64,000 nucleotides of DNA from Blastocladiella emersonii ATCC 22665 (lineage: Eukaryota; Fungi; Blastocladiomycota), in contig JANHCV010000006.1 of NCBI GenBank assembly GCA_025594325.1, forward strand, positions 682,001 through 746,000. Direction: 5' to 3'. Positions 1-38,660 of this stretch are shown in pieces (position 1 is the first letter of the stretch; each line of letters opens with the position of its first letter). Position numbers and translations under genes: made by a program. The notes under the pieces were generated by a model. It saw only the letters and a program-made list of their open reading frames with translations. It did no database searches and was not told where the DNA came from.

Positions 1-887
1 ACAGCGCCGCGACGAGCGTGATGAACCCGTCGAGGACCACGAGCGGGCCGCCCGCGACCGCCGCCTCGTGCACGACCGTCGCCATGGCCGTGATCTCGAG
101 GTCGCCCGCGCACCGGAGGACTTCGGCCCACTTGGCGGCGGCCGCGGGGCTCGCGTCGAGCGGGGTCGCCGGGATCACGCTGCGCCACGCGGCGAGGACG
201 CGGTCGACCAGCGCGCACTTGGCCGCGTACCGCTCCCCCGAGACGCCCGTGCCCGCGCCCGTGACGTCGGCCGCGGATTTACCGGTGGCGGCGCCGAGGA
301 GGGTGGACGCGACGGCCGTGTTCCCGATGCCCAGCTCGCCGATCCCCAGCACGTCGACGGCGTCGCCGCGCGCGGCCTGCAGCGCCTTGCGGCCGTGCGA
401 CATGGCGAAGCTGAAGGTCACGGGCTCCATGGCGGGGGCCGTGTCCGGGCACGCAGTGCCGTGCGGGAGGAGGCGGAAGTGGTCCACGGTCGCGTAGCTC
501 AGCGGCGAGTCGACGCCCAGGTCCATGACTTTGAGGTCGATGCCGTGCGCGCGGCACAGGCAGCTACAGCGAAGGCGACGTGTTAAACACAGGGAACATG
601 TCACCAAGCAGCGTAACGTACTTGATCGCAGCCCCGCCCTCCGCGACATTGCGCAGCATCTCCCGCGTCACGGCGCGCGGGTACTGGGACGTCTCGTCGC
701 CGAGCCCGTTGTCGGCGGCGAACAGCAGCATGCGCGGGCGGTCGACGTGCGGCGCCACCGTCCCCTGCACCACCATCAGCTTGCTCGCCCACGCCTCGAG
801 CGCGCCCAGCGACCCCGGCGGCTTGGTCTTGCGCAGCAGGTGGTCGGCGGCGGTCGCGCGGGTCACGGTGGGCGGAGGAGGGGTCAT
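1..887 (-). CDS. cobT: Nicotinate-nucleotide:dimethylbenzimidazole phosphoribosyltransferase (CobT); 3' end runs off the window
   Basis: ATG at 887. Exon 1 has TKPPGSLGALE, FAADNG and SQYPRAVT..M..N...GGAAIN. Intron 564-621 (GTACGT..CTGTAG) joins in frame to CLCRAHGIDLKVMDLGVD...GIGELGIGNTAVASTLL...GAGTG...VVLDGFI. These are hallmark CobT motifs. Confidence 0.9.
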
Positions 888-1132
888 GGATGAAGAAGGT
901 TGCATTGGGAGTGTGTGCGAAGGGGAAGAGAGAGAGGAAGCGGCGGGGGGCGAAGCGAGGCGGATCGGGTGCACTCCCTCGTTCCGAAAGAGTCGCCACG
1001 TGGCGTGAACCCCAACGCGCCGCTGACGCGTCTCGCACCCGGCTGCTGTGCCACCATGGCCACCGTGGGGCACATCAACACGGCAAAAGGTAGGTTCGGA
1101 TATATATGAAATCAGTCATCATGCAAACACCC

Positions 1133-3830
1133 TCATGTCTTCTTGAACGGCGAGTTGAACAGGCCCAGCAGCCGCGTGACGTGCCCCGGCTTGACCCCCA
1201 CCTCGCGCGAGCTGTCGCCGCTCCCGCTCCCGCTGCTCCCGCTGCTCCGGAGCGACCCGTTCGAACCCTTGGACGAGGTCGAGCTGAGCTCGGACGGGTG
1301 CATCGGGAACGGCCGCGGCGGGCCCGTGCTTGTCGACGGCGTGGAGGGTGAAGAGGAAGCGGCGGCCGACGAGTCCTTGTTGTTCGCCCGCGCAATCTTC
1401 TTGACGTCCTTGCGCTGCGACGTGCCCTTGGACGGCGACGGCGAGGGCGACGGGACCGACTCGACGGCGGACACCGCGCCAGCCCCCGCGGCCGCCGTCG
1501 TCGAAATTGCACTCGGCAGCACAGGTACCGGCGCGCGCAATGGGACCGCGGGATCGGGCGCCACCGCCGAGGATGACAGCGGAGGCACGGGATCGAGCAG
1601 CGACGCGGGCGGCGGCGTTGTCGTCCCCGTCCGGGTGCGTGCCGCTGCGGCCCCAGCGTCGCCCGTCGTCGCCGTCGTGTCGACCACCGTCTTCTTGTCG
1701 AGGCGGTACGGGCTCGGCGGCTTCGGCGGCGGGAGCGTGCTGCTCGTTCGACGCGGGCTGTCGGGCAGCAGCGACGCGCGGGAGGGTGGGGTCGAGGGGA
1801 GAAGAGTGACAGGGTCGATGGGTGCTGGAGCGGATGCCGTGGGGATCGGAACGGCGGCGGGTGTTGGTGTAGGGGCGCATTCTGGTGGCGGAGACGGGAC
1901 GGCGACGGGGACGGCGGCAAAGCACGCGGCAGCGGGAGGTAGAGAGGCGGCGGCGGCGTCGGATCGTGGTGGAGGCGACGCCGTGGCGGGCGCAGGAGCG
2001 ACGGGAGCAGGTTCTGGAGTAGGCGATGGCGATGGTGGCCTTGGTGCGGCGGATACGGGCGCCGGAGAGGGTAGAGGGACCGTCGCGACGGGTGCTTCCG
2101 CCTCGGCAGCGTCGGGGTTCGAGGACGCCGCAGTGGTGCTCGCAGCCGAGGCGGACGCAGCAGCTGCAGCGGCCGCGGCCGCGGCCGCCGCGTTCGCGTT
2201 GGCAGTCGAATGTCGTGGCGAGAACGAGCGAGTCGTCGCCGGCGCAGATGCCGAGGCAGCGGGCGGCGTCGGCGACGGTGATGCCCTGCGCTCGGGAACC
2301 GGTGCAGCCTTGGCGGCGCCATCGCCCGAAGGCGGCGGCGGCGGTGCGGACAGCGACGTGATATCGGTGCCGAGCCGCGCGTGGTTCTCGACGGCGCGCT
2401 TAGCGGCCGCGTACAGCTTGGGCCCGTCGTCCTCCTCCTGGTCGATGACGTCGAGCACCGACTCGTCCTCGTTGGTACGCGCCTCGACGTCCGCATTCGG
2501 CAGCGCGAGGAGGTGCATGAGCGTGTCCTTGTGCCCCGCGTCGGCCGCGTAGTGGATCGCGGTCCACCCCTGGTCGTCGCGCACGTTCGGGTCCGCGGCG
2601 CGGCCGAGCAGCCACTTGACGGCGTCGAGGTGGCCGTGCGCCGACGCTATGTGTAGCGCCGTGGCGCCGCGCGACGGCTGCACCACGTCGACGTGGTCGA
2701 TCTTGGCCTGGAACATGGTCAGCAGCGGGATGTCGCCCGACTCGGCCGCCGAGAACCATAGAACGGGAACGCAGAACTGCACCCGCTTCTTGGCTTGCGC
2801 GGGCGGGCCCGCGCGCGAACTCAGGTTCTCGGTCGACCGCGACGCAAGGATGCTCCGCGACGGCGGCGCGTTGGTCGAGCTCACCGAGTCCGTGCGCCGC
2901 CCGCGCGTCGGCGTCGACGTCGCGGTGGTCGGCGGAGCGGCGCCCGGTGCCGCGGTGGTGGAGCCAAGCGCGGACTCGGACTGCGTGCGGAACACGTCTA
3001 CGCGTCGTGGAGGTCAGTGTGAGCGAGTGGAGGTCGTATCGCGAGAGAGCGGGAGCTGTACCGTTGCGCAGCGAGGGCGGCGGAGCGCGCAGGAACAGCA
3101 TGCGGGTGACGTCGTCGTCGGTGCAGTCGACGGCCTTGTACTTGCGGTCATTCTTCTTGCCGGCGAGGTTGCTGTGCAGCTCGAGGACGCGGGCGACGAG
3201 CTCGGCCATGCCAAGGAACGAGGCCAGGTGCAGCGTCGTGTTTCCGTTGCCCCACACGGACGTGAGGAAGGTGATGAGCGCGTACTTTGACCCAACGCTC
3301 TCGGCCTCACGCGCCAGGTAGTTGAGGATGTCCAGCGCGATCTCCTCCTCCCCCAGAAAACACGCGACCTGGATCAGGTTGAGCCTTGCCGTCGACGGGC
3401 CCAGCAGCTCGTTGGCGTCGGCCAGGATCTCGGGCTCGTGGAAGTACCGCTTGTCCGCGTTCGGCACCAGGAACGTCGCCAGCACCTGGTCCGCAGCCGC
3501 GCTGCTCGCGTTCTCGAGCAGCGCCTTGACGCCCGCGCGGTCCCCCGCGTTGATGGCGTCCACGAGCGCAGCCGCTAGCAGCTGCACCTCGTCGTCCTCG
3601 CCGCCGCCCGACGACGGGTTGCTCTCGCCCGAGTGCGTCGAGCAGTCGGACAGCGACGACATGGACCGCTCGCGCCGCGCAGGCGCGGTCGTGGTCGTCG
3701 ACGGGGACTCGGTCGCCGGCGCCGATGCGGGAGCAGACACGACGACGGGCTTGACGGGCCGCGGCGGGCCATCGGTGGTGCCCGCAGCCGCCGTGGCCCC
3801 GGGTCGGTCCGGGCCCGAGATGCTCGGCAT
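1133..3830 (-). CDS. Ankyrin-repeat protein with RVxF motif (PP1 regulatory subunit/MYPT-like module) and long Pro/Ala-rich tail
   Basis: Two exons (intron 2998-3061, GTACAG..CGTAG). Ankyrin repeats GNTTLHLASFLG, GATALHIASAHGHLDAVKWLL and GWTAIHYAADAGH; KKRVQF lies directly before the second ankyrin block. Confidence 0.78.
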
Positions 3831-4253
3831 GGTGGTGTGTGCGTATGGATGCTTCAGAAGTCGGTGTCACGAGTGCGACAGGTGTGTTGATTACATGGAG
3901 TGAGCAACCGAGGCGGGGGCTCCTCGAATCGGCGGTCGTGGAAGCGGGCAAGGAGAGCGCGCGCGCCGCGACTTTCCCTCGGCCGGGTCGCCACGGTCAT
4001 GGGATGGCGCGCTTCGCCGCTTCGTCTCTCGCCTCGTCTCGCACCGGCGGCGCGCCCGACGCGTCGCGCGACGCGAGGTGCGAGGCAGTCACGTTGCGCG
4101 CGCGGGCCGTCACCTGACGCGCGCCCAGGGACGCGTTCCGCTTTTCGCCTTCGCGTGGCGCGCCACCGACTAGCTTTGGCCCCTCCCGTTCGTGCTCTCG
4201 TAAGCACCATCGACCACAAGAAACGCCACGAAACTCGCCGCACACTGCAACCC

Positions 4254-6430
4254 ATGTCATTCCTCTTCTCGTCGCGCTCGCCGTTCGACGAGGCCGTCGG
4301 TACGGGTCGACCCGCGGTGCATCGCGCGATGACCGATGGATGGTGACTCACCCGCCCATCGCACCCACATGAATAGACAAGGCGACGAGCGAGCTCATCC
4401 CGAGCGGGACCGAGGACCTGGCGCTCAACTTTGAGATCTGCGACCAGATCCGCGGCAAACAGGTGCCGGCCAAGGACGCGATGCGGTCGCTCAAGCGGCG
4501 CCTGACGCACGCCAACCCGAACGTGCAGATCCTCGCCCTCAAGCTGACGGACCTGTGCGTCAAGAACGGCGGCGACCACTTCCTGATCGAGGTGGCCACG
4601 GACGAGTTCTCGTCGGCGCTCGTTGGCCTGCTCAGCAACGCCGCGCTCGCGCTCCCCGTGCGCGCCCTGCTGCTGCAGTACTTCCAGTCGTGGGCCCTCG
4701 CCTTCCGCGGCCGCCCGCACCTCGACCCGCTCTACACCACTTACGTGATGCTGCGCAACTCGGGCCGCTTCGCGTTCCCCTCCACCAACGACGAGGACGC
4801 GCTCGCCGGGAAAGCCGTCATGATCGACACCAGCGCCCCGCCCGAGTGGTCCGACTCGCCCGTCTGCGAGCGGTGCCGCACCGCCTTCACCTTCACCAAC
4901 CGCAAGCACCACTGCCGCGCGTGCGGCATGACCTTCTGCGGCGACTGCTCGGCCAAGTCGATCGCCCTCCCGCACTTTGGCGTCGTCGACCCCGTCCGCG
5001 TCTGCGACGGCTGCTTTGCCCGCGGCGGCAAGCCCGCCACGCTCGTCGGCGCCGCTGCAGGCCCGTCGCCCGCTCCCGCGCGCCAGTCGGCTCCCGGTCC
5101 CGCTGCTGCAGCGGTAACGCCGGCGGCCGCGCGGTCGCAGACGGCCATCCGCGAGCAGGAGGAGCTCGACCTCGCTATCGCGCTCTCGCTCGCCGAGGCC
5201 GACGGCGCGACCCGCGGTCAGCCGTCGCACTACGGGTCCGCGTCGCAGGCCCCCGCGTCGCGCTCGACGGCTGCCGCGGCGCAGCCCGCGAAACCCGTGG
5301 TCGAGAAGCGCGTCTCGGCGGCGGCGCCCGCATCCGCGTCCGAGGAGGACGACCCGGACCTTGCCGCCGCCATCTCGGCGTCGCTCGCCGAGCTCAACCT
5401 GCGCAGCGGTAACGTCGGTGCCGGTCGGCCGTACGACGCGGCGGCCGAGGCCTCGGCGCGCGACTACCGCCGCAAGAGCACTACGCCGTCGCTCAAGGGC
5501 CACCCCGCCGCCGAGGCTGCGGCAGCAGCTGCTGCGGCTGCGGCTGCCGCTCAACAGCAGCAGCAGCAGCAGGTCCTCGAGCTCACGGCGACCGAGATGG
5601 AGAACATCGAGTTGTTCGCGTCCATGATGCAGCGTATCGAGGAGCAGGGCCAGGCCTCGGCGATCCTCGGGTCGCGCGAGTACGCGTCGCTGCAGCAGTC
5701 CATGGCGCTCCTCCACCCGAAGCTCACCACCTCGCTGCACGACACGCTCGCCGTGCACCGCCAGCTCGAGGACCTCCACCGCCGCGTCGGCGCCGCCCTC
5801 CGCATGTACGACGAGGCTATCGAGTCTGGGCTCGCCGGCGGACCGCACGCGCCGTCTCAGCCGCCAGCGGCGGCGTTGGGTCCGCCCGCGTACCACGGCG
5901 GCGGTCCGGCTGGGTACCCGCAGCAGCAGCAACCACAGCCGCCGCACATGTACACGGGCGACCAGCACGGGTATCCTGGCCCGCACCCACCGCCGCAGCA
6001 GTACCACGCGCCGACCCCGCCGCCGCAGATGCAGGGCCCGAACGGGTTCCCGCCCGGTCCGCCGCAGCACGCGGGCTACCCGAACGGCGCGCCGATGCCA
6101 CCACCGCCCCAGCAGCAGCCCCAGCAGCAGGCCATGTACCCGCCACCTGGCCCGACGCAGTCCCCGCCGCCGCCGCCCGCGGGCCACTACGCGTACGGGC
6201 CTCCGCCACCTCAGCACCAGCAGAGCTACGCGCCGCCACCTCAACAACAACAGCAGCAGCAGTACGCGTCGCCCCCGCATCACCACCAGCAGCAGGGCGC
6301 GCCGGCCGGGTACGCGCCAGGTCTGCCGCCGCCCATGGTACCGCAAGGCCAGCAGCAGCATCAAATGCCGCCACCGACCCAGCAGGCGCCCGAACCGCCC
6401 AAGGAGGCGGCGCCGTTGATTGAGCTGTAG
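4254..6430 (+). CDS. VPS27: ESCRT-0 subunit Vps27/Hrs (VHS-FYVE-2xUIM-coiled coil-PQ tail)
   Basis: MSFLFSSRSPFDEAV|DKATSELIP (intron 4300-4376); VHS domain; FYVE CERCRTAFTFTNRKHHCRACG; UIMs EQEELDLAIALSL and EDDPDLAAAISASL; C-terminal APLIEL. Confidence 0.95.
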
Positions 6431-7495: not shown

Positions 7496-10076
7496 TGGCC
7501 TCTTTCTCGTCGTCGTCATTGCCAGATCTCTCCTCGCCGTCGCTATAGGGATCAGAGTCCGACGGCGAGACGGGGCGAGCAGGAGCAGGTTGGACGGCGA
7601 GAGCCGCGGCCGCGGACGACGAAGGTGCATGCGAGTCGACGCAGCGACACTTGCCCGGCGCAGGTGGCGGGTCCGATGGCGTAGACGGTGGCGAGGCGAG
7701 TGGCGACGGTGTCGCGGGGACGCGAGGAGCAGCGAGGTGGGACGGCAGCGGGTCCCGCGCGAGCGCGTACTCACGGGCCCCAGCTCGGCGTAGGCCGTCT
7801 TGTTGATAACATGATATGTTGTTGATGGTGGTTGAGGTCGCTCTTTGCAAGAAGAGTGAGGAAGTTGAGGGGGAGACGGCGGCGAGGCCGCTCGGCGGAC
7901 GGCGGGCTGGGTGGCGGGGCGGGGACGGCTTGGGACACCGCTGTCCAATCCCGATTTCAGCGGGTCCGATCGGGTTTTCCGCGGTTTTCTCGCTCCCCCC
8001 GCAAGCCACAAACCCAGTCTCAAGCTTATCGGATAGAGCGCAACGAGGCGCACACGTGGGTGCCAGTCGTGTCGCGATGTCTCGCACCTGGCTGGAGAAC
8101 GGGGCGATCTTGGCTCCGAAACGCGTGGACCCGAGCGTCTTACGACTCCCACGCCCTCAGTTTTCAACTCCACATCTTTTAACTTCACACAGTGGTGGCA
8201 GTCTACGCATAGTGCGTCCACGAAAAGTTTGAACCGGATTCATGCAAAGGTGTTGTCAGGGCGGGCGCTCGCGCGAAGTTCATAACTTTGGCGGCGCCTC
8301 CCAGCTCAGCCGTTAGGCGGTGCGCCACGCTAAAAATCTCGGGCCCTAACAGTATCGATAGCTACAATTTTGCTGAGCAAAGTTTCGAGAGTGTAGAGTA
8401 AAAAGTGGTGGAGATATGAGGGGTGGGGTGAGGGACACCAGTGTGCCATGGTCGTCTATGGGTTAAGACATCATAAGCAACGCATCTAACTCTACGCAAT
8501 CGCTCCGGCATCGGCTTCTTGACATCAGCGAACAAGGCGGCGCCCGCCGCCGCCCGGGTCGCTGCGCTGCAGCCTCGGGTCGCTCACACATCTTGCAACT
8601 CAAACTGTGCTCGGCCGGGATCAAAGTATTGGATGCGGTAACTTGTCGCGCGCCAAAATCCCTATCGCGCGGATACGCACAACTGTCTGTCCTACAACAC
8701 ACTTCACTCGAGTGGCCAGTCAAAAGGCAAAGGCAATCAGGGCGAGGTGCAGGTACCTCCGCCGCGTGCTTACAGCCCGCCGGACCGCCTCGGCCCGATC
8801 CGCCGAGCTTGATGGCGGTCATGCACGGCATCAAGGTAAGTGCGCGCTTCCGCCCTACTACTTTCCTCCGCCAGTCGGCAATCTTACTCACTGATCTGTT
8901 GTCATTGGTCTAGGCCGCGCGATCCTGCGAGACAGATGGGCCTGACCGCTCAGCGACAATGCGACTGGTACCACTCGAAAAAAGAACTTCTCGCGGCGCT
9001 CGTGGTGGTGGGCGTCGCTCGCGCCCGTGCCGTGAAAAACTGCGCGCCACTGGCGCGAGCGACGCCCTTCAACTGGTCGTTCACCACGGGCGCCGCTCGC
9101 AAGATGCATGTTCGAGTGAGCCACGCCGTCGCTGTTGCTGGACCTGTGAACCTTGCTGAGTTAGCGGGGGGACGAGCGCGGAGAATGATGGGGGACAAGA
9201 TGGAGAGGAAACAAGAGGAAACAGGAGGGTGAGGAGGCCGCACACACCTGTATGATCCGGAAACGTGAGCTAAAGAGAGCTCACGTCCGCGGCGGGGGTG
9301 CGGCCACCTTTTGAGGGCGACAAGGAGCGGGCGGCGAGCCGCCGGCTGCGGCCGGGCGCGGACGCCCGCGTTCGCGGCGGTGAGAAATGTAGCGCGATCA
9401 GCGGCACGCGCGCGCGCGTGACCCGAGCATCACGCGCGTCGCGCGACAGCTGGGGATGTGATCGTTGGTTGTGATCGTCGTCAACACGAGGTCGATTTCA
9501 TTGTTCGATTCGCTGGTTTTCATCAAACAACGGCTGGATGAGGTTTAAGCCAAGTTGAGGAATCGTAACCATGGGTCGTTTGGTACTTTCTCACGCGGAG
9601 TTTGACGACGGTGCTTGCTGGTCTTCACGCGCGAGCAGCGGCGGATGGGACGGCGTTGTACCGCTTGACCAGCCCACGCAAAAGTTGGGTAGTGAATCAA
9701 ATCGTGCAACCAACGATATTTCCGAGTCGCTTGACAAAGTCGGCCCCAATCGAGGTTTTCCAACGTCTTCAGAAGGTAACGTGAGTGGCGCGCCGCGTCG
9801 CGTCGCCGTCGCGTCATGTTTCAGGTTTGCTACTCGACCGCCGCTCGACTACGACCTTTCCCAAGAGATCCGAACGTTCCTACAGTAACCAACGGTTACG
9901 TTTGGCCCTAAGCATGTAGATCTTGTTTTGTTCGGAACGCAACTAGCCGGGTGACATGCACGATCGTTGGATTTACTTCACAGCTGCCTGAACCCGCCTC
10001 CGAGAGACGTTCGCGGGCCAAGACAACATCTTAGGAGCAATAAATTGTGAAATTGAAAGTCCCGACAGTAAACGAC

Positions 10077-10654
10077 TCAATCGGCTTCGCGATCACCAGC
10101 AATCTCGTCGTCAAACGTTGGAGGATACTGGGCGATTCCGGTGTTGCGCGCATGCAACTCAGCAACATCATACACGAAGGCGATAATGTCTCGCTTCACT
10201 CGTGCCACACCACCTAAGATTTCGACCTTCGTGCTCTTCACGAACCGCTCGACATCCGTTGCCTCGCCAAGAAGTGTGATGGCGAGGGCGATTGTGGCGA
10301 AGGGAGACAAGACGCCAAAGTCCATCCTCTCTGATCGCGGTTCATACATGGTTGCTGTTATGATAATGAAAAGGCACAGGCGGAGAGGAGAAGCCGAATT
10401 CCAGCAAAACTGCGCTTCACTGCCACGACTTGTAGCGCGGGGAGCAGCAGGTGCTAGACACGCGGCGCGAGACACGCGTGGAGACCCGCTGCGGATTTCA
10501 TGGCTTGGCGCGCCCCGAGAAATCGCGTCTCACAGCTCACGTCTCGCAGGGCACCCACGTGAGTTTCAGCTGATATTCGCCCGAAGCAAGCGGTACCGTT
10601 CTGCCGGCCGATCTTCCGCTCGAGGTGCGTGACGGTCGCCTCGAGCTTACCCAT
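10077..10654 (-). pseudogene. Diverged copy (copy C) of an unknown helical family ('family X'); C-terminal part clear, 5' part uncertain
   Basis: DFGVLSPFATIALAITLLGEATDVERFV...DIIAFVYDVAELHARNTGIAQYPP aligns by eye with the C-termini encoded at 11418-12113 and 59333-60019. Confidence 0.55.
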
Positions 10655-11417
10655 TCTACTCCCTTGGTCTCGGGCAGTGCGCGTGAACGTCTGACTTGTC
10701 CGGTACCATGGCTAGAGGTTGCAGGACGAATAAGGTCGTACCACACAAGACGATCTCGTAGCAAAAACTTGGCGTCCGCCAAACCCGTTGCGACAGGTTC
10801 CAAAGATCACACTAGAGAGCAGGTTCGATCCATGGCTCCCCACGCAAGATTTCGATAGGGCGCACACGGTGATAAAAGCAGCTATCGAGTCGGAGACCCG
10901 TAAGATGAAATCAAGGATTGCCCTCGCCAGCGCGTCTCGCGGGGCAAACAGACGTGCGTCGCCACGGCGTTCATGAGGTCCACGAGTGCTAGAAAATCGC
11001 AATGCTTCTTGTTCCGCCGCATACATTCCTTTATTATTAAGAATTACGGCACCAGGAAGTCCGCCGGGGAGGTGATCGACGACTGATAGCAACGTGTCTC
11101 GACTAACACGAGCGACGCGTAACGCGATGCGCCACATCACGTTCTCACATGATGCGCTCCGCTCGCCATTCCGATGGTTGCCAGCGACTCTCAGTCCTCC
11201 CTGGCGACAAATAAGTTGGCGCAATATAATCACAGGGGTCAGTTCCTATCCACCAGTGCCTTAGATTCGTCCCTTGCCTGAATTCGACTGCTGATCGAGT
11301 CCTAAGCAAGGCCCGCATCGCAGCTTCGATCGCCGTGAGGACTGCAGTGTTTCTGGAAAGTTGGTTATGGACAAGATCAGGTGGAAATACAAGATATGCA
11401 TTGGACATCAACAGGAG

Positions 11418-12113
11418 TCATAGAGACCCACGGTTTCCACCAGCTTCGTCGCCGTAACCAGGAGGATGGCTGGCTACGCCCGTCCTGCGCGCATGGACTT
11501 CGGCAAAATCGTACACAAAGCTGATGACGGCAATCTTCACTTGTTCCAGGTGCCAGGAAATGTCGTTGTGCGTGGTTCCCACGAGGCGTCAAAGGTCTGC
11601 CGCCTCGCCGCAAAGCGCGGCGACGTCAGCAATCGTGGAAAAGGGCGACAGGAAACCTTGATCCGTTAGCTCGCCCTCAAGCCTAGCGACTGATGCGTCG
11701 ACAAGGTCTACAACCTCCCTCGCGCGCGCCCACTGGGTGTAAAGGTCGAGAAGGCGCGGATCGAGGCGAGCGAGGAAGTAGTGGTACTCGCTTGGGGAGC
11801 TCAGAAGCTTGTTGCGAACTTTGGTGGTGATTTCGATGGTCTCCTGGACCTCCTTTGCTGTAGCTGTGATCTGAGAACTTGCGTCCTCGTGGATACGCTT
11901 CAACTGGCGCGAAATTTCAAGAATGTCGCGCATGCGGTCCCGAGAAAGCTCCACGACTTCACCAAGGGCCTGGTTTGAGCTCGCTGCGCGGACGCAGGGC
12001 CCGACGGCGGCCAACGAGAGTCGTCCCGTGGCAACACGGCGTGCGACCCACGACAAGCAATCGGGGCCGTGGGCAACATCGTCCGGGGGCATCCGTTCAT
12101 TAGAAGTCAACAT
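11418..12113 (-). pseudogene. Family X copy B, interrupted by an in-frame TGA at 11589-11591
   Basis: MLTSNERMPPDDVAHGPDCL...SRDRMRDILEISRQLKRIHE...GFLSPFSTIA...ADL*RLVGTTHND...FVYDFAEVHARRTGVASHPPGY. Collinear with 59333-60019 on both sides of the stop. Confidence 0.75.
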
Positions 12114-32935: not shown

Positions 32936-34189
32936 GGTGGACGGAGAACCCGAAGCAGCGCGAGTATGGAAGGTCGATCGGTTGAAGAGCGTTCGCCTAA
33001 GTGTGGAAGAGTAGGCGGTACTTATACGGGGTGTCCTTCGTCTCGTCGCGTCATGGTCAACATTTGGGCGGCCACGGCCATCACCACCCGTCGGAACCTT
33101 TCCACGCCTTGCCAAACAGGACTGAGTTAAAGGCCCAAGTCTAGCCAAGCTAGGCAAGGAACAATCGTGCGGAGGGGGGAACAAGCGTGTGCGCGCGGGG
33201 ACCTGCGATTCTCGATCTCCAACGTCAGCGCCAACTCACGCTTGCGCGCCTTGACTGTTCGATTCCGCGCGCCCCGTCGCACGGGCCTTGCGGAACTGCT
33301 TTGTCCGAGCCCGGCGTTATCGATTTTGTGTTCGGGCCGCGGGTCCCGGCCAGCACGTCATGCCTCCCAAGTGCTTGTTACCTGCCATCTTTGCTCTCCC
33401 ACTGTTCCCTCACCTCACCGCAAGCGCTATCGGCGCGCTATCGTCACTTCGAACAATCAGGCGGCGCTCCGCCGGATCCGTGTGCGGGGTCCACTACAGG
33501 CTTCTGGACATTGTGTTTGGCATGTCGGCGGGTGGCGAACGACCGCGATTGAGTGGACATCAACAAATCTAGCCGGCGGAGCGCATGGAATCTTCGGACA
33601 TGCCCGATCAAGGTCTTGGTAAGAGTGAGAGAGCATGAATTTAGCACAATCCGGCAGCCTTACGAGCTGCTGCGCCCCCGCATAGTTTGCCAGCAGCGAA
33701 CGACACCGACAAGGTCTATGCGCAATAACAGCCTTTGCTTACTATTGCAGGAACTCTCCTGGACCCACGCCACTGGGTTTGTGGGATAGGAAGCCGGTGG
33801 TCGGCGAGGCGAACGAGCGCGCGCGGCCGTCGCGCGTCTTAGGTCACGGGGACTCGGCTGAGCGCGTTGCGCCACAGCTCACGTGCTCTCGTGTCGCGTC
33901 GCGTCTCCCACTTCCGTGTCCCCCGCATTCGAGCCTACAGGCAAGCGATTCACCCAACGTCGCCCACATAGACTTGGACGCGCGCTGAATCAAAATAGCG
34001 CTTCTGAGGCAAATCGTGGGTTTTGTTTAGCGCCAGTTCTCGGACAAACTTAGGTTCAGGGCAAGGACACATGATGCCTCGCTTGAGCAAGCTTTTTGCG
34101 CTTGGCCTCCATCTAAGTATACAGCAGTCAATGTCTAATATCCTATGAGCAGATCGTGGATATTTGGCTGCGACTGCGGTTCTGCGTTG

Positions 34190-34343
34190 GGGGTACGATG
34201 GATACGGCGTATGGGTAGACTGAGCTGCATGGTCTCGAGGCAACCGCGTCGCGTTCGACACTCGTCGGGCGTGTCGCAAGTGCCGTAAGTGGATTCTGGT
34301 TCGTCCCGGCGCCCGCCACTCACCTCTTTTTGCCGCTCGTCTG
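34190..34343 (+). repeat. 154-bp dispersed direct repeat, copy 1
   Basis: Ungapped match to 37631-37784 with about 6 mismatches counted by eye. Confidence 0.9.
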
Positions 34344-34433
34344 TTTTTAGCCTTTCCTTTCCAGCTTCCAGCTTCCAGCTTCCAGCTCCGCGCACTCGCG
34401 GGCCAGCTGCCGACTCGCACCCGTCTACACCAG

Positions 34434-34800
34434 TTCTGGCCGCACCGCTACGAGTCGCCCAACTGCGCCGAACGCCTCAAGAATGGCATCGAGGTCGCTG
34501 ACATGCAGGTGAACGCGTTCGCGTGCCCCTCTTCGCGCGCGCTCGTCCCCACGGCGCTCGACGACGCCGCCGCACGCATGGGTAACGCCCTTGCGGCGGT
34601 CGCCAAAGCCGAGATCGGCGGCGGCCTCCGCGCCAGCGTCGCCGGCTCGCTCGCCAAGCGGCTCTTCAACCCGAACCACGTTGAGCGTGCTGCGGCCGCC
34701 ATCGTGGACGCGCCACTCGTCGCGTGGTTCAAGCAGATGTACGGCCACCTGCGAGAGCTCATCGACCCGCGCCTCGCGCTCTTCGCCGCGACGGCCCTTA
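34434..34800 (+). pseudogene. Orphan 3' exon of an unidentified gene, cut by the MITE
   Basis: CAG acceptor at 34431-34433, then GC3-rich FWPHRYESPNCAERLKNGIEVADMQVNAFACP...RLALFAATAL; no upstream exon is evident. Confidence 0.5.
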
Positions 34801-35537
34801 GCGGACCTGCGCACGTTCCGTTGAAGTCACCCAGCGTTGAAGGTTGAAGATGAAGCGCCACAGCCGGCATCCAGCGGAGCATCGGCGGACCTCGGCGGAC
34901 CTCACCCCAAAAATCAATACATCGTCTACACCTCACCCAACTTGCTGCACAGTGTCAGGGGAGGTCCCAGTGGGTCGCACGAAGAGTTTCGTGGTCAAAC
35001 GCGGGTGTCGCGAAATCCGCCAACTTCGACTACCCTCAACCTCGCCGATTGACGCGACAGAGCTCCCTCTCTACTTTCAAAACCCACCACAGACCTCATG
35101 AAAGTCTTATAAGCAGCTATTGTCGTCATCCTTACCTCAGGCTGCGATGAAAACTTGGTCAGAGATGTGACGACTCCTTGCCCTCCCTGCCGCTCTCATT
35201 CATGATGGAAGGCTCGATGGCCTCGGTCGATCGCATCAAGCCGGTAAGGAACGTCTTTGGCGAGCATAAGGGCGATCGTGCCGGCGTGGGGAAGCCAGAC
35301 GAACAGGACGAAGTTGACGGATTTCGCGACACCCGCGTTTGATCACGAAACATTTCGTGCGATCCACTAGGACCTCCCCTGACGCAGTGCAGCAAGTTGA
35401 GTGAGCTGTAGACGATGTATTGATTTTAGGGGGTGAGGTCCGCCGAGGTCCGCCGATGCTCCGCTGGCTGCCGGCTGTGGCGCTTCAACTTCAACCTTCA
35501 ACGCTGGGTGACTTCAACGGAACGTGCGCAGGTCCGC
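34801..35537. mobile_element. MITE (non-autonomous Tc1/mariner-type) with about 225-bp terminal inverted repeats and TA target duplication
   Basis: TA|GCGGACCTGCGCACGTTCCGTTGAAGTCACC... at the left end and its reverse complement ...GGTGACTTCAACGGAACGTGCGCAGGTCCGC|TA at the right end; non-coding core. Confidence 0.85.
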
Positions 35538-35594
35538 TATTGCCTTGAGCACTGCGAGGACACAACAAAGACAAGATCAATGAATGACACACAA

Positions 35595-36631
35595 TCACTC
35601 CTCCTTCGCCTGGTCCTTGCTGTTACCCGCACCAGCAAGCTTCATGGCCGCGAGCTCCTCGTCAAGAAAATCGTACGCCTGATACTTGGCAGCCGAGGCG
35701 AGATCGAAACATTCGAGCATCCCAGCAAGCTTCATCAAGGAGCGCCAGTCGTCAAGATCGAGGTCGGCCGGATCAACAGAAAGCGATTTGAGCGCCGGCG
35801 CGATTGCCTTAGGAATCGGAGCGCCAGGAAGCCAATTGGTGTAGAGGTGAACTAGCGCGAGGACAAACACGTTGGTGGACCAGGCGGGCAGCTTGATAGT
35901 GTCGTCCGCGTTCTTGAGACGCGACCACTCGCCGCGGAACATTAGCGCAAAGAAAGGCGAAGCAGGAACGAGAATAGCGCGAGAGGAAAAGACAGGCGTG
36001 GTTGCATCTCCGGATAGAAACTGGACATCAGAAACTGCCGGGTCATTAAAAAGACTGCACATGTCGTTGATCGAGCGAACCACCACGTCACCTGCGGGTG
36101 AACTAGGATCGTGGAAGGAAATCACAACCAAGCGAAGGTATCGGGGCAAGTAGGTTTCGTCAAGGCGATCCCACACAACTGTAGTTGAAGCAGCAGATGC
36201 GGAACTGACCACGCTAAAGACCTTTTTGGATGAGGAATGCGCGTCGATGACCAAAGTGCAAGAGAAAGTGCGGGCTGGTTCGCTGCACTTTTCAAGAACG
36301 AGAATGACCTTGTACTGATCGCAGCTGTTCTCGATTCGAACAAAATTGAGGTAAAACTCGGTTGCTCCAAGGGATCCGCCCGCATCGGAACCCGGAGTTC
36401 GAAATCCTTTGGCAGATCCAAGGCTGTCTCGTCTCATCGCGAAGTGATGAACGGGCCTGCCTTCAACTTGCGAAGTATATGGCGCGAAGAACGCAACCTA
36501 TTTGATACGGGTTTAATTCCTGGACCATCGGTGCTCGAGCGACCATGCGTACAGGAAACTCCATCTGTCTTTAGGGTTTCATTGCTTGAAAGTGAGGTCG
36601 AGAGCAGGCATGGCGGGCGCCCAGAGGCCAC
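35595..36631 (-). CDS. BTB/POZ-domain protein with a beta-rich (MATH-like?) N-terminus
   Basis: LFNDPAVSDVQFL...VFSSRAILVPASPFFALMFRGEW...TIKLP..STNVF...HLYT is a BTB pattern; probable first exon from ATG 36631 with an intron. Confidence 0.75.
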
Positions 36632-37630
36632 AATTTAACTGCTTAAGTTCTGCTGGACACCGACCTGGACACGATCACGAGTGCGCACCCGCCAAACACG
36701 TCGGGCGAGCGCGACGTGCCGCTCATCTGATCGCGATTGCGCCCCTGATCGGAGGCCTGATGAGACCAGCCACAGCACCACATCCCACGTTTCATCCTCC
36801 GTTCTCCTCACTCTCCCTCGCTCTTCCGCACACACTGGCAGCGCATCAACTCAGGCAGTCACCAAGTTGCCGAATTTAGTTAAGGAAGTCTCGGACGGCT
36901 CGTCGAGCTCGGGCAGCAGCTCGAGCCGCTTGTCGCCAGTCGTCAACGCCGTTCACGCGCCTGCCCCAGCCGTGTGGCCGTGCCAGGCTCATCGAGACGC
37001 TCGTAACGATACATTCCCAGTTGATCCTGGGCCTGTTAGACTTGGCGGTCAACAAGCTCAACTCACAATGGTACCGTCAGATCGTGAAGCGACCGAGCGG
37101 GATCTACTCTGAGTTTCTCGCAGGCGGGCGAAGCCGCCAAGGCCGCGGCGAACGCGGCCCCGCACGTCCTGCTCATGCTCCCTCACAAGGACCCGAAGTG
37201 TATGTGGCTGCTCGCCTACTTCCCGACAAGCTGCACCGCGTGATGCTCAAGATGGCCTTCATCGTCCTTGCGTACGCGACCTACTTCACGCCGACTATCG
37301 GCACGGTGCTAGCGCTTACATGATGTCGTGAACGAAATCGATGCTGAGATGCGAGCTTAAACGGCGGCGCCAGGGACGATCGCTTGACGCGCGCATGCGT
37401 ACGTGGACGAGCGGTGGCCGTACTACCTCAGGTCCGGGTTCCCCGTGGTCGTTCTCTCGGTCCTCGACATCAACAGCCTGCTTTCCAAACTGCTCGAATT
37501 AGCTTAGGTTTGCCCAAGTTTCAGTTGCACTTTGAGAGCGAAACCGCGATACAAGTCAAGTCATCAACATTTGGCGGGGCATGATCCTTGAAGCGGAGTG
37601 ATTTTAACGGCCGCCCTTACCGTAGTGTTC

Positions 37631-37784
37631 GGGGTACGATGGATAAGGCGTATGGGTTGACTGAACTGTATGGTCTCGAGGCAGCCGCGTCGCGTTCGAC
37701 ACTCGTCGGGCGTGTCGCAAGTGCCGTAAGTGGATTCTGGTTCGTCCCGGCGCCCGCCACTCACCTCTTTTTGCCGTTCGTCTG
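37631..37784 (+). repeat. 154-bp dispersed direct repeat, copy 2
   Basis: Matches 34190-34343 at an offset of 3441 bp. Confidence 0.9.
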
Positions 37785-38660
37785 ATCACCGATGCCCGCT
37801 GGGATCTCTCGCAAAATATATTTTAAGCACCACAACTGTGAGCGACAGTGACGTGGTGGTTTTGGGCGCCTTTCTTTCCGTCGAAGGTTGCGGACTTGCC
37901 GAACGCGACACGTCGCTTCGCGGCACGTGCAGTGTGGCGCAACGCGGTCAGCTGATTCCTTGTGACTGCGACGCGTTTTTCGCCCGGCCCTGGCCACGGC
38001 CACGCCCACTCACACTCATACGCCCACTGATATAGCACCTGATGCAATATACTAGCTGCAGTAAATACTTGGAAGTTGTGTTGTTGCGAACAGGCTGCCG
38101 CGAGGGCGGGAGTGAACGACCCTCCCTCGCTCATGAGCACCCAAAGGCCGAGATTGCACGAAACCTCTCCAATTCTTGAGAGTCTCAAGATGAATATCCG
38201 GGCAAGGCGCTCTGGAGGCGACACGTGGTGAGTCAAGCTCACTCACCCTTGCGCAGCACGTGTCTCCCGCCCTCGAAGCGTCGATGTTCCCGCGGAGAGC
38301 GCGTTTTGGCCTACCTGATAACATGGCGCTACGAACCTGCGTTGATTGCGTCAGAACAAGAACGAGCGCGCGTGACCTTGGAAAATCGCGAGGAAAGAAA
38401 CAAGCGAGTTGGCGGCGGGAGACTTTCAAGGGCCTTGGCCCATTTTCTCCTCGAGGTTCTTGCTGATCGAGGACGCGTGCCCAGACACAACGCCAAGCGA
38501 TTGTTCCTCGACGAGACACGCGTGTGAAAGCGCTTGGTACACCGACGACCCTATAGTTTCCGGCAAGCACTCCGTCTTCCCTCTCTTCTCGGCCATCAAC
38601 AACCCGCGGCCTGCACATTGCGCAACCTCCCCTAGACCATTAGACCTCCGCCACACAAAC

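What the first reader, a model, noticed from the sequence alone, without database searches (positions are those of the whole stretch)
1..887. Intron-containing CobT in a fungus: possible cobamide (B12) remodelling pathway
Seen: CobT motifs interrupted by a canonical 58-bp spliceosomal intron, so this is a resident eukaryotic gene and not bacterial contamination. Known: CobT activates the lower ligand (DMB plus NaMN to alpha-ribazole-phosphate) for CobS/CobC; Dikarya are generally B12-independent, early-diverging fungi retain B12-dependent enzymes, and some algae use CobT/CobS to remodel pseudocobalamin. Inference: this fungus may swap lower ligands on bacterial cobamides, a capacity I am not aware of being described in fungi.
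Basis: partly seen in the sequence, partly recalled or inferred. Interest (0 to 1): 0.75.

Follow-up and report, generated by a model that had tools for sequence, protein, structure and literature searches.

The report
Intact spliced cobT gene in Blastocladiella
The water fungus Blastocladiella emersonii carries an intact, intron-containing gene for CobT, the enzyme that prepares the lower part of vitamin B12. Swimming fungi have had this gene since before chytrids and blastoclads split, so they may tailor scavenged B12-like molecules as some algae do, but this has not been tested.

Summary
On the minus strand, 887..622 and 563..1 are two exons of a bacterial-type CobT (Pfam DBI_PRT), split by a 58-nt GTACGT...CTGTAG intron at 621..564.

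The gene runs 299 nt past the window start. The full 375-aa product is P0177 (locus L001, B. emersonii assembly JANHCV).

The AlphaFold model (pLDDT 94) matches solved bacterial CobT structures at TM 0.81-0.91.

Fifteen CobTs from Blastocladiomycota and Chytridiomycota form one clade (100/99). Its branching mirrors the fungal phyla. Intron positions are shared between B. emersonii and Paraphysoderma, and between Paraphysoderma and Obelidium. This makes it an old resident nuclear gene, not contamination.

The nearest relatives are operon-encoded bacterial CobTs, with moderate support. A single eukaryotic origin is not rejected (AU p 0.25).

Caveats:
- The Blastocladiales proteins score below the NCBIfam equivalog cut-off.
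- No RNA run was listed.
- Two searches did not reach the partner cobS, so that rests on an earlier scan note (s1-265228).

The scan also noted this same stretch in an overlapping window (s1-076593). No paper found reports CobT in fungi. Algal COBT is known and is required for remodelling in Chlamydomonas. Verdict: new member of a known kind.

The parts
622..887 (-). cobT exon 1: ATG at 887..885, codons 1-88 plus the first 2 nt of codon 89. It holds the KTKPPGSLG motif and the YP..VT.EM segment.
   Evidence: Translation. Pfam DBI_PRT positions 3-88, 76 bits. Identical to P0177 residues 1-88.
564..621 (-). Spliceosomal intron, 58 nt, phase 2, inside codon Asn89 (GGAAI|N|CL). It starts GTACGT, ends CTGTAG, has a TTAAC branch-like site about 20 nt before the AG, and is 52% GC.
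   Evidence: Sequence. Splice reconstruction reproduces P0177 exactly. Paraphysoderma intron 2 sits in the same codon at the same phase. GC drops from 0.74 to 0.52.
1..563 (-). cobT exon 2, the part inside the window: last nt of codon 89 through codon 276. The exon continues 299 nt beyond window position 1 (L001:5888-6186) to codon 375 and the stop.
   Evidence: Translation. Pfam DBI_PRT positions 90-255, 120.5 bits. Identical to P0177 residues 90-276. The remainder was read from L001.
317..346 (-). GIGELGIGNT motif (residues 162-171). Glu165 (codon at 337..335) corresponds to Salmonella CobT Glu174, which holds the ribose 2'-OH of the product.
   Evidence: Alignments to 4kqj/1d0s and the T. 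thermophilus CobT. Position 165 is Glu in at least 90% of the 26 rows of A1. The role of E174 is taken from PMC9561151.
888..1132 (-). 5' flank of cobT, up to the stop of the upstream ankyrin-repeat gene. It contains an alternative in-frame ATG at 905..903 and an AT-richer stretch around 1083-1120.
   Evidence: Sequence. In-frame translation MQPSSSMTPPPP. No bacterial-type promoter or terminator was found.

Best explanation
The gene is a nuclear, vertically inherited gene of Blastocladiella emersonii. It encodes a bacterial-type nicotinate-mononucleotide:base phosphoribosyltransferase (CobT, EC 2.4.2.21).

Shown here:
- The gene is intact.
- A 58-nt intron must be spliced out to give the frame.
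- The product has the CobT fold.
- It keeps both active-site glutamates.
- It has been held in zoosporic fungi since before Chytridiomycota and Blastocladiomycota diverged.

Inferred:
- In the cytosol the enzyme transfers phosphoribose from NaMN to a free base, most likely 5,6-dimethylbenzimidazole taken up from the environment, giving alpha-ribazole 5'-phosphate.
- CobS, reported elsewhere in this genome by the scan, then joins this to a corrinoid precursor.
- The fungus would thereby turn scavenged incomplete or 'wrong' cobamides into cobalamin for its B12-dependent enzymes, in the way COBT is needed for pseudocobalamin remodelling in Chlamydomonas.
For: Family and fold:
- Pfam DBI_PRT matches both exons.
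- The full protein matches T. thermophilus CobT at E 6e-34 and Salmonella CobT at 1.7e-25.
- The AlphaFold model has pLDDT 94.4 and pTM 0.93. It matches 1j33, 1l4e and 1d0s at TMq 0.81-0.82 and TMt 0.88-0.91.

Active site:
- Glu341 in MRLGEGSG aligns with the SeCobT general base E317. Glu165 in GIGELGIGNT aligns with E174. The roles of these residues come from PMC9561151.

Long-term constraint:
- 35 columns are invariant across the 26 fungal and sister bacterial sequences.

Residency and age:
- The intron, GC3 of 0.96 and eukaryotic neighbours point to a host gene.
- The fungal clade has 100/99 support, with Blastocladiomycota (91/88) and Chytridiomycota (99/93) as subclades.
- Intron positions are shared within and between the two phyla.

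Functional coupling of CobT and CobS in other eukaryotes:
- A marine eukaryote carries a CobS-CobT fusion.
- An environmental eukaryotic contig carries a head-to-head CobS/CobT pair.

Precedent and demand:
- Knocking out Chlamydomonas COBT abolishes remodelling (preprint 10.64898/2026.08.07.738727).
- COBT/COBS presence correlates with remodelling in algae (PMC4850488).
- Blastocladiomycota have complete B12-dependent pathways (PMC8085122).
- Scan notes report MetH, MCM, EutBC, CBA1-like proteins and cobS in this genome (not tested here).
Against: - No expression or splicing data: no RNA run was listed.
- I did not verify cobS of B. emersonii. Two searches returned only algal, protist and bacterial CobS in their top 120.
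- No note or evidence for CobU, CbiZ, CbiB, CobC or BluB in this genome. How a complete cobamide would be opened, and where DMB comes from, are both unknown.
- B. emersonii and Allomyces CobT score 259 and 269 bits, below the TIGR03160 equivalog cut-off of 319.3. Paraphysoderma and Obelidium pass.
- Blastocladiales carry lineage-specific changes at otherwise conserved positions: H60N, G243D, H215W and others. Base specificity may therefore differ.
- The gene is not clustered with any B12 gene.
Confidence: 0.6

Rival explanations
1. CobT works on its own. The fungus makes alpha-ribazole (phosphate) from DMB without building cobamides itself, for example as a stored, exported or exchanged intermediate, as proposed for a diatom.
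For: Algal surveys find COBT more often than COBS. A diatom releases alpha-ribazole under low B12 (10.1101/2024.12.03.626653). I could not confirm cobS in this genome.
Against: A follow-up note of this scan reports an intact, intron-containing cobS in the same genome (s1-265228). Other eukaryotes fuse or pair CobS with CobT. The fungus has B12-dependent enzymes that would benefit directly.
Confidence: 0.12
2. The Blastocladiales enzyme has shifted specificity. It activates another base (a purine, a phenolic or some other heterocycle), or uses another donor, for a purpose only loosely tied or not tied to cobalamin.
For: Scores fall below the NCBIfam equivalog and subfamily cut-offs. The stem branch of the Blastocladiales clade is long, at 0.78. 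Ten otherwise conserved positions are replaced, including H60N and G243D. CobT homologues such as ArsAB activate phenolics (PDB 4hdk series).
Against: Both active-site glutamates and the NaMN-binding glycine-rich motifs are kept. Residues at SeCobT positions 80, 88 and 175 (Y, M, L) are the same as in T. thermophilus CobT and in the rest of the fungal and sister clade. Characterised CobTs are broadly promiscuous yet prefer DMB (own knowledge of Hazra 2013 and Crofts 2013, not checked here).
Confidence: 0.12
3. The gene is a relic with no current function: an inherited gene that is no longer used or is decaying.
For: No expression data are available. B. emersonii also has the B12-independent MetE according to a scan note, so B12 is not strictly needed for methionine.
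Against: The reading frame is intact, the splice sites are canonical and the catalytic residues are kept. GC3 is extreme at 0.96, as expected for a translated host gene. Orthologues are retained in at least 14 other zoosporic-fungal records across two phyla.
Confidence: 0.05
4. The sequence is bacterial contamination or a recent bacterial insertion mis-assembled into the fungal contig.
For: CobT is otherwise a prokaryotic enzyme, and the nearest non-fungal relatives are bacterial operon genes.
Against: The gene has a spliceosomal intron at a position shared with Paraphysoderma. It lies inside a 2.02-Mb contig between eukaryotic genes. Its best bacterial identities are only about 40%. Its composition matches the host. 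The fungal sequences are monophyletic and mirror the species tree.
Confidence: 0.01

Closest known systems
Chlamydomonas reinhardtii COBT (Cre12.g555500) and algal COBT/COBS/COBC remodelling genes (Helliwell 2016, PMC4850488; preprint 10.64898/2026.08.07.738727)
   Same: Both are nuclear, intron-bearing eukaryotic genes of the bacterial CobT family, in organisms that have both METH and METE and cannot make corrinoids. The proposed role is activation of exogenous DMB for lower-ligand exchange.
   Different: The host is a heterotrophic zoosporic fungus, not an alga. In my tree the fungal clade is apart from the two non-fungal eukaryotic CobTs sampled (Euglena and a marine eukaryote), although one eukaryotic clade is not rejected (AU p 0.247). 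Chlamydomonas COBT itself was not in my data set. There is no functional evidence in fungi.
Salmonella enterica CobT (PDB 1d0s, 1l4e) and Thermus thermophilus CobT (1j33, 1wx1)
   Same: Same fold (TMq 0.81-0.82, TMt 0.88-0.91) and 30-34% identity. The general base Glu (E317 / E341 here) and the GE(L/M)GIGNT glutamate are conserved.
   Different: The fungal gene is monocistronic with an intron, not part of a cob operon. Two insertions fall at about residues 223-233 and 311-327. It has Tyr and Met where Salmonella has S80 and Q88, as in Thermus. Blastocladiales carry Asn in place of the His of the AADHG motif.
Operon-encoded CobT of uncultured bacteria (P0189, P0009 and relatives; loci L002, L003)
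   Same: This is the sister group of the fungal clade in both trees (99* in FastTree; 87/84 in IQ-TREE), at 40-44% identity. Some members share a C-terminal insertion at the same place.
   Different: These genes sit in TonB receptor-CobD-aminotransferase-CobA-histidine phosphatase-CobT-CobS operons, have no introns, and some are fused to a CobC-like phosphatase. Their phylum is not identified: none of 80 named GTDB genomes fell in this clade.
B12-dependent metabolism of early-diverging fungi (Orlowska et al. 2021, PMC8085122)
   Same: That paper establishes that Blastocladiomycota keep MetH, MCM and class II RNR pathways and the cobalamin-handling proteins, which gives a CobT product something to serve.
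   Different: That paper does not mention CobT, CobS, lower ligands or remodelling (zero occurrences).

Membership tests
CobT / DBI_PRT (PF02277), bacterial type, EC 2.4.2.21 | Match to Pfam PF02277 above the gathering score | tested here: met
   Exon 1 scores 76 bits and exon 2 scores 120.5 bits against a cut-off of 22.6. Profile positions 3-88 and 90-255 are contiguous across the intron.
CobT / DBI_PRT (PF02277), bacterial type, EC 2.4.2.21 | Score above the NCBIfam equivalog TIGR03160 (319.3 bits) or subfamily NF000996 (306 bits) cut-off | tested here: not met
   P0177 scores 259.2 and 259.9 bits. Allomyces scores 269.4 and 272.8 bits. The orthologues of Paraphysoderma (326 / 318) and Obelidium (330 / 333) pass. 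The models were built for prokaryotes, so this shows divergence of the Blastocladiales branch, not exclusion from the family.
CobT / DBI_PRT (PF02277), bacterial type, EC 2.4.2.21 | General-base glutamate (SeCobT E317) in the RLGEG motif | tested here: met
   Glu341 in MRLGEGSG aligns to the motif in 4kqj, 6b5f and 1wx1. It is invariant in A1. It lies outside the window at L001:6079-6081. The role is taken from PMC9561151.
CobT / DBI_PRT (PF02277), bacterial type, EC 2.4.2.21 | Glutamate of the GE(L/M)GIGNT motif (SeCobT E174) | tested here: met
   Glu165, window 337..335 on the minus strand.
CobT / DBI_PRT (PF02277), bacterial type, EC 2.4.2.21 | Bacterial CobT three-dimensional fold | tested here: met
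   Model pLDDT is 94.4. Foldseek gives TMq 0.81 and TMt 0.91 to 1j33, and TMq 0.82 and TMt 0.88 to 1l4e. Archaeal CobT reaches only TMq 0.50-0.57.
CobT / DBI_PRT (PF02277), bacterial type, EC 2.4.2.21 | Catalysis of NaMN + DMB to alpha-ribazole 5'-phosphate + nicotinate | not testable with these tools
   Needs an enzyme assay or complementation.
Eukaryotic cobamide remodelling module (COBT + COBS, as in Chlamydomonas) | COBS encoded in the same genome | tested here: inconclusive
   Two CobS-domain searches listed only algal, protist and bacterial CobS among the best 120. Scan note s1-265228 reports an intact, intron-containing cobS on another contig, which I did not verify.
Eukaryotic cobamide remodelling module (COBT + COBS, as in Chlamydomonas) | B12-dependent enzymes present in the organism | not tested
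   Rests on PMC8085122 for the phylum and on scan notes for MetH, MCM and EutBC in this genome.
Eukaryotic cobamide remodelling module (COBT + COBS, as in Chlamydomonas) | Growth or LC-MS evidence of conversion of pseudocobalamin plus DMB to cobalamin | not testable with these tools
   Experimental.
Eukaryotic cobamide remodelling module (COBT + COBS, as in Chlamydomonas) | Common descent with other eukaryotic COBT genes | tested here: inconclusive
   In the free tree fungi and Euglena plus the marine eukaryote are apart. Constraining them to one clade costs 12 lnL units, AU p 0.247, which is not rejected. Algal COBT proper was not sampled.

The most novel reading that the evidence does not exclude
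Zoosporic fungi (Chytridiomycota and Blastocladiomycota) inherited a bacterial-derived nucleotide-loop assembly module (CobT with CobS) from their common ancestor. They use it to complete or re-tailor scavenged corrinoids. This would be the first cobamide-modifying capacity in the fungal kingdom. In Blastocladiales the enzyme has diverged (H60N, G243D, sub-threshold equivalog scores), possibly towards a different base preference. If so, aquatic fungi would be players in environmental B12 and pseudo-B12 cycling alongside algae.
Probability: 0.45. Interest if true: 0.65.

Novelty: new member of a known kind. Interest (0 to 1): 0.5.

Why it matters
Fungi are usually treated as B12-free. More recently, early-diverging fungi have been treated as plain consumers of ready-made cobalamin. 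An old, conserved CobT (with CobS reported in the same genome) suggests that swimming fungi can choose or rebuild the lower ligand of corrinoids they scavenge.

In fresh water much of the available corrinoid may be pseudocobalamin from cyanobacteria, so this would change which vitamers count as usable for them. It would also add a heterotrophic eukaryotic group to the organisms that compete for DMB and alpha-ribazole.

The idea is directly testable in B. emersonii, which is a tractable model. It also gives a dated example of a bacterial cofactor-tailoring gene fixed in an ancestral fungal genome, since intron positions are shared across two phyla.

Tried and rejected
- RNA evidence: the look-up of sequencing runs for window 1-1100 listed no RNA run. 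Expression and splicing remain unverified.
- cobS of B. emersonii: I searched with the CobS domain of a marine eukaryote fusion and with Botryococcus CobS. Both top-120 lists held only algae, protists and Bacteroidota MAGs. No fungal CobS was reached, and this says nothing about absence.
- Gene clustering: I looked for CobS, CobC or other B12 genes next to CobT in B. emersonii, Catenaria, Paraphysoderma and Obelidium and found none.
- Bacterial donor: a scan of GTDB species genomes gave 80 CobT loci from many phyla at 30-41% identity. None fell in the sister clade. The donor phylum stays unknown. My early impression of a Bacteroidota origin, from named hits, was not upheld by the tree.
- Separate origin from other eukaryotes: the free tree suggests it, but the AU test does not reject a single eukaryotic clade, so I do not claim it.
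- ESM Atlas look-up of P0177 returned only generic bacterial CobT clusters.
- The chytrid 975-aa protein P0005 as a meaningful fusion: the N-terminal part is CCCH zinc fingers, most likely a merged gene model.
- Plus-strand ORFs over the same bases (18..497, 68..586, 525..893) are by-products of 71% GC. The Pfam and NCBIfam matches found in this stretch are all on the minus strand.
- Mapping the Blastocladiales-specific substitutions onto the model was not possible, because model coordinates are not exposed to scripts.

Full report
**What is in the window**

The minus strand of window 1-887 carries the 5' three quarters of a cobT gene.
- Exon 1 runs from the ATG at 887 down to 622 (88 codons plus 2 nt).
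- Exon 2 runs from 563 to the window edge.
- Between them lie 58 nt (621..564) that begin GTACGT and end CTGTAG, with a TTAAC branch-like site.

Exon 1 matches Pfam DBI_PRT (PF02277) at profile positions 3-88 and exon 2 at positions 90-255. The scores are 76 and 120.5 bits against a gathering score of 22.6. The two matches abut only if the 58 nt are removed. Read through unspliced, the frame ends at the intron's own TAG. NCBIfam names both pieces as nicotinate-nucleotide--dimethylbenzimidazole phosphoribosyltransferase. An in-frame ATG six codons upstream (905..903) is an alternative start. The long plus-strand ORFs over the same bases are by-products of 71% GC.

**The rest of the gene and the organism**

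An exhaustive HMMER search and a word-index search led to P0177, a 375-aa protein listed without source, as the window's own product. Its gene is L001:5001-6186 on GenBank JANHCV010000006.1 (assembly GCA_025594325.1, a 2.02-Mb contig). Window 1-5887 is the exact reverse complement of L001 1-5887, and splicing out the 58 nt reproduces P0177 exactly. JANHCV is the Blastocladiella emersonii assembly of PMC9730499.

The 99 codons outside the window hold an intact C-terminus with MRLGEGSG.

**Is it an enzyme-grade CobT?**

P0177 matches solved CobT structures by sequence: T. thermophilus at 6e-34, Salmonella at 1.7e-25 and ArsA at 5e-26.
- Glu341 aligns with the Salmonella general base E317.
- Glu165 (window 337..335) aligns with E174. 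The roles of both come from PMC9561151.
- At the three positions engineered in PDB 4kqj (S80Y/Q88M/L175M) the fungus has Tyr69, Met77 and Leu166, like Thermus CobT and nearly all of the aligned set.

An AlphaFold model built from 26 sequences has pLDDT 94.4 and pTM 0.93. It superposes on bacterial CobT structures at TMq 0.81-0.82 and TMt 0.88-0.91, but on archaeal CobT only at TMq 0.50-0.57.

One caution. The full protein scores 259 bits, under the NCBIfam equivalog (319.3) and subfamily (306) cut-offs. Allomyces does too, while the Paraphysoderma and Obelidium orthologues pass. Ten positions conserved elsewhere are replaced in Blastocladiales, among them His60Asn in the AADHG motif and Gly243Asp. 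The family assignment is safe. Identical substrate preference is not.

**Resident or foreign?**

The gene lies between eukaryotic genes. Its CDS has GC3 of 0.96, like its neighbours at 0.83-0.92, while the intron drops to 52% GC.

The closest relatives are all zoosporic fungi:
- Blastocladiomycota: Allomyces, Catenaria (two copies), a second Blastocladiella-labelled record and Paraphysoderma.
- Chytridiomycota: Quaeritorhiza, Nowakowskiella, Phlyctochytrium, Dinochytrium, Blyttiomyces, Obelidium, Entophlyctis and Chytridiales sp. JEL0842.
- One environmental sequence, plus one further fungal record (P0004) whose organism name was cut off in the output.

In a careful IQ-TREE analysis (75 rows, LG+C20) the 15 fungal sequences form one clade (100/99). 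Blastocladiomycota (91/88) and Chytridiomycota (99/93) are subclades, which mirrors the organismal tree.

The exon structures agree. The B. emersonii intron sits in the same codon and phase as intron 2 of Paraphysoderma. Intron 4 of Paraphysoderma (phase 0, after VGG|LEI) coincides with intron 4 of Obelidium, a chytrid. The Catenaria copy examined is intronless. The gene was therefore already an intron-bearing nuclear gene before the two phyla split. No Dikarya, Mucoromycota or Zoopagomycota member of this clade appeared in either database search, within their limits.

**Origin**

The sister group (99* in FastTree, 87/84 in IQ-TREE) is a set of CobTs from uncultured bacteria. These sit in classical operons: TonB receptor, CobD, aminotransferase, CobA, histidine phosphatase, CobT, CobS. 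None of 80 named GTDB genomes retrieved with the alignment falls in that sister clade, so the donor phylum is unknown.

Two other eukaryotic CobTs, from Euglena and a marine eukaryote, branch elsewhere. Forcing all eukaryotes together is not rejected (AU p 0.247). I leave the choice between one eukaryotic origin and a fungal-specific transfer open.

**Function**

The shown facts are an intact, constrained, ancient CobT. The step to cobamide tailoring is inference, and rests on five points.
1. COBT knock-out in Chlamydomonas abolishes growth on pseudocobalamin plus DMB (preprint 10.64898/2026.08.07.738727). COBT/COBS presence tracks remodelling in algae (PMC4850488).
2. CobS and CobT are coupled in other eukaryotes: an 802-aa CobS-CobT fusion among eukaryotic genes on marine contigs, and a head-to-head CobS/CobT pair on another eukaryotic contig.
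3. Blastocladiomycota have complete B12-dependent pathways (PMC8085122).
4. Notes of this scan report cobS, MetH plus MetE, MCM, an EutB-EutC fusion and CBA1-like uptake proteins in this genome. I could not test these. Two attempts to reach fungal CobS failed.
5. The protein has no N-terminal extension relative to bacterial CobT, so a cytosolic location is the default.

Unknown are the source of DMB, how a complete cobamide would be opened (no CobU, CbiZ or CbiB is noted), and expression (no RNA run was listed).

**Novelty**

Papers on fungal B12 use and on eukaryotic remodelling do not mention fungal CobT. Helliwell et al. noted only an oomycete and an ichthyosporean among non-algal hits. GenBank records of several zoosporic fungi already carry the automatic CobT name.

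The scan itself flagged the same stretch in an overlapping window (s1-076593) and followed up the partner cobS (s1-265228). This is a new member of a known kind: eukaryotic COBT extended to fungi, with good evidence of antiquity. Interest is moderate until activity or remodelling is shown.

Noticed in passing
window 903-905 (minus strand): An in-frame ATG six codons upstream of the annotated start would give MQPSSS-MTPPPP. Which start is used is unknown.
   Followed up: partly
P0177 residues 18, 60, 104, 119, 207, 215, 243, 247, 251, 252 (window exons, and L001): Blastocladiales CobTs replace ten positions that are at least 85% conserved in chytrids, Paraphysoderma and the sister bacteria. Examples are AADHG to AADNG and GGLE to GDLE. 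They also fall below the NCBIfam equivalog cut-off. This could mean a changed base preference.
   Followed up: partly
L005:6001-8409 and L006:6001-8409: An 802-aa CobS-CobT fusion protein (P0088) lies on marine metagenome contigs among clearly eukaryotic genes (VHS/GAT, Rrn7, FANCE, CKS). This is a Rosetta-stone link between the two enzymes in a eukaryote.
   Followed up: partly
ENA ERZ27275788 contig of 30,333 bp (no DNA served), genes at 1963-3144 (-) and 3523-4695 (+): CobS (393 aa) and CobT (P0316, 390 aa) are a head-to-head gene pair on an environmental eukaryotic contig, whose neighbours include UCR_14kD and PIG-P.
   Followed up: no
L007 (Catenaria anguillulae MCFL01000031.1) and P0179: Catenaria has two near-identical CobT proteins recorded on the same 315-kb contig. 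P0175 is intronless. P0179 lacks three segments and may be a different gene model or a second copy.
   Followed up: no
P0005 (Chytridiales sp. JEL0842, 975 aa): The CobT domain follows about 600 residues with CCCH zinc fingers. This is probably two genes merged by the annotation.
   Followed up: partly
P0007, P0009, P0031, P0036, P0111 (metagenomic bacteria): Bacterial CobT occurs fused to a BluB-like nitroreductase, a CobC-like histidine phosphatase, an ABC ATPase and zinc-type alcohol dehydrogenase domains.
   Followed up: no
tree: B. emersonii CobT groups with Allomyces (98/69) rather than with the other Blastocladiella-labelled record (P0176), which groups with Catenaria and an environmental sequence. 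This points either to old paralogy in Blastocladiales or to a non-monophyletic genus.
   Followed up: no
window 8001-12000 and 34001-38000: Two islands of much lower GC (0.56-0.59) stand against about 0.70 elsewhere. They were not examined.
   Followed up: no
(CobS searches): Eukaryotic CobS proteins from green algae, diatoms, haptophytes, dinoflagellates and Euglena form a large family. Their nearest named bacterial relatives in the list are Bacteroidota MAGs at 48-50% identity.
   Followed up: no
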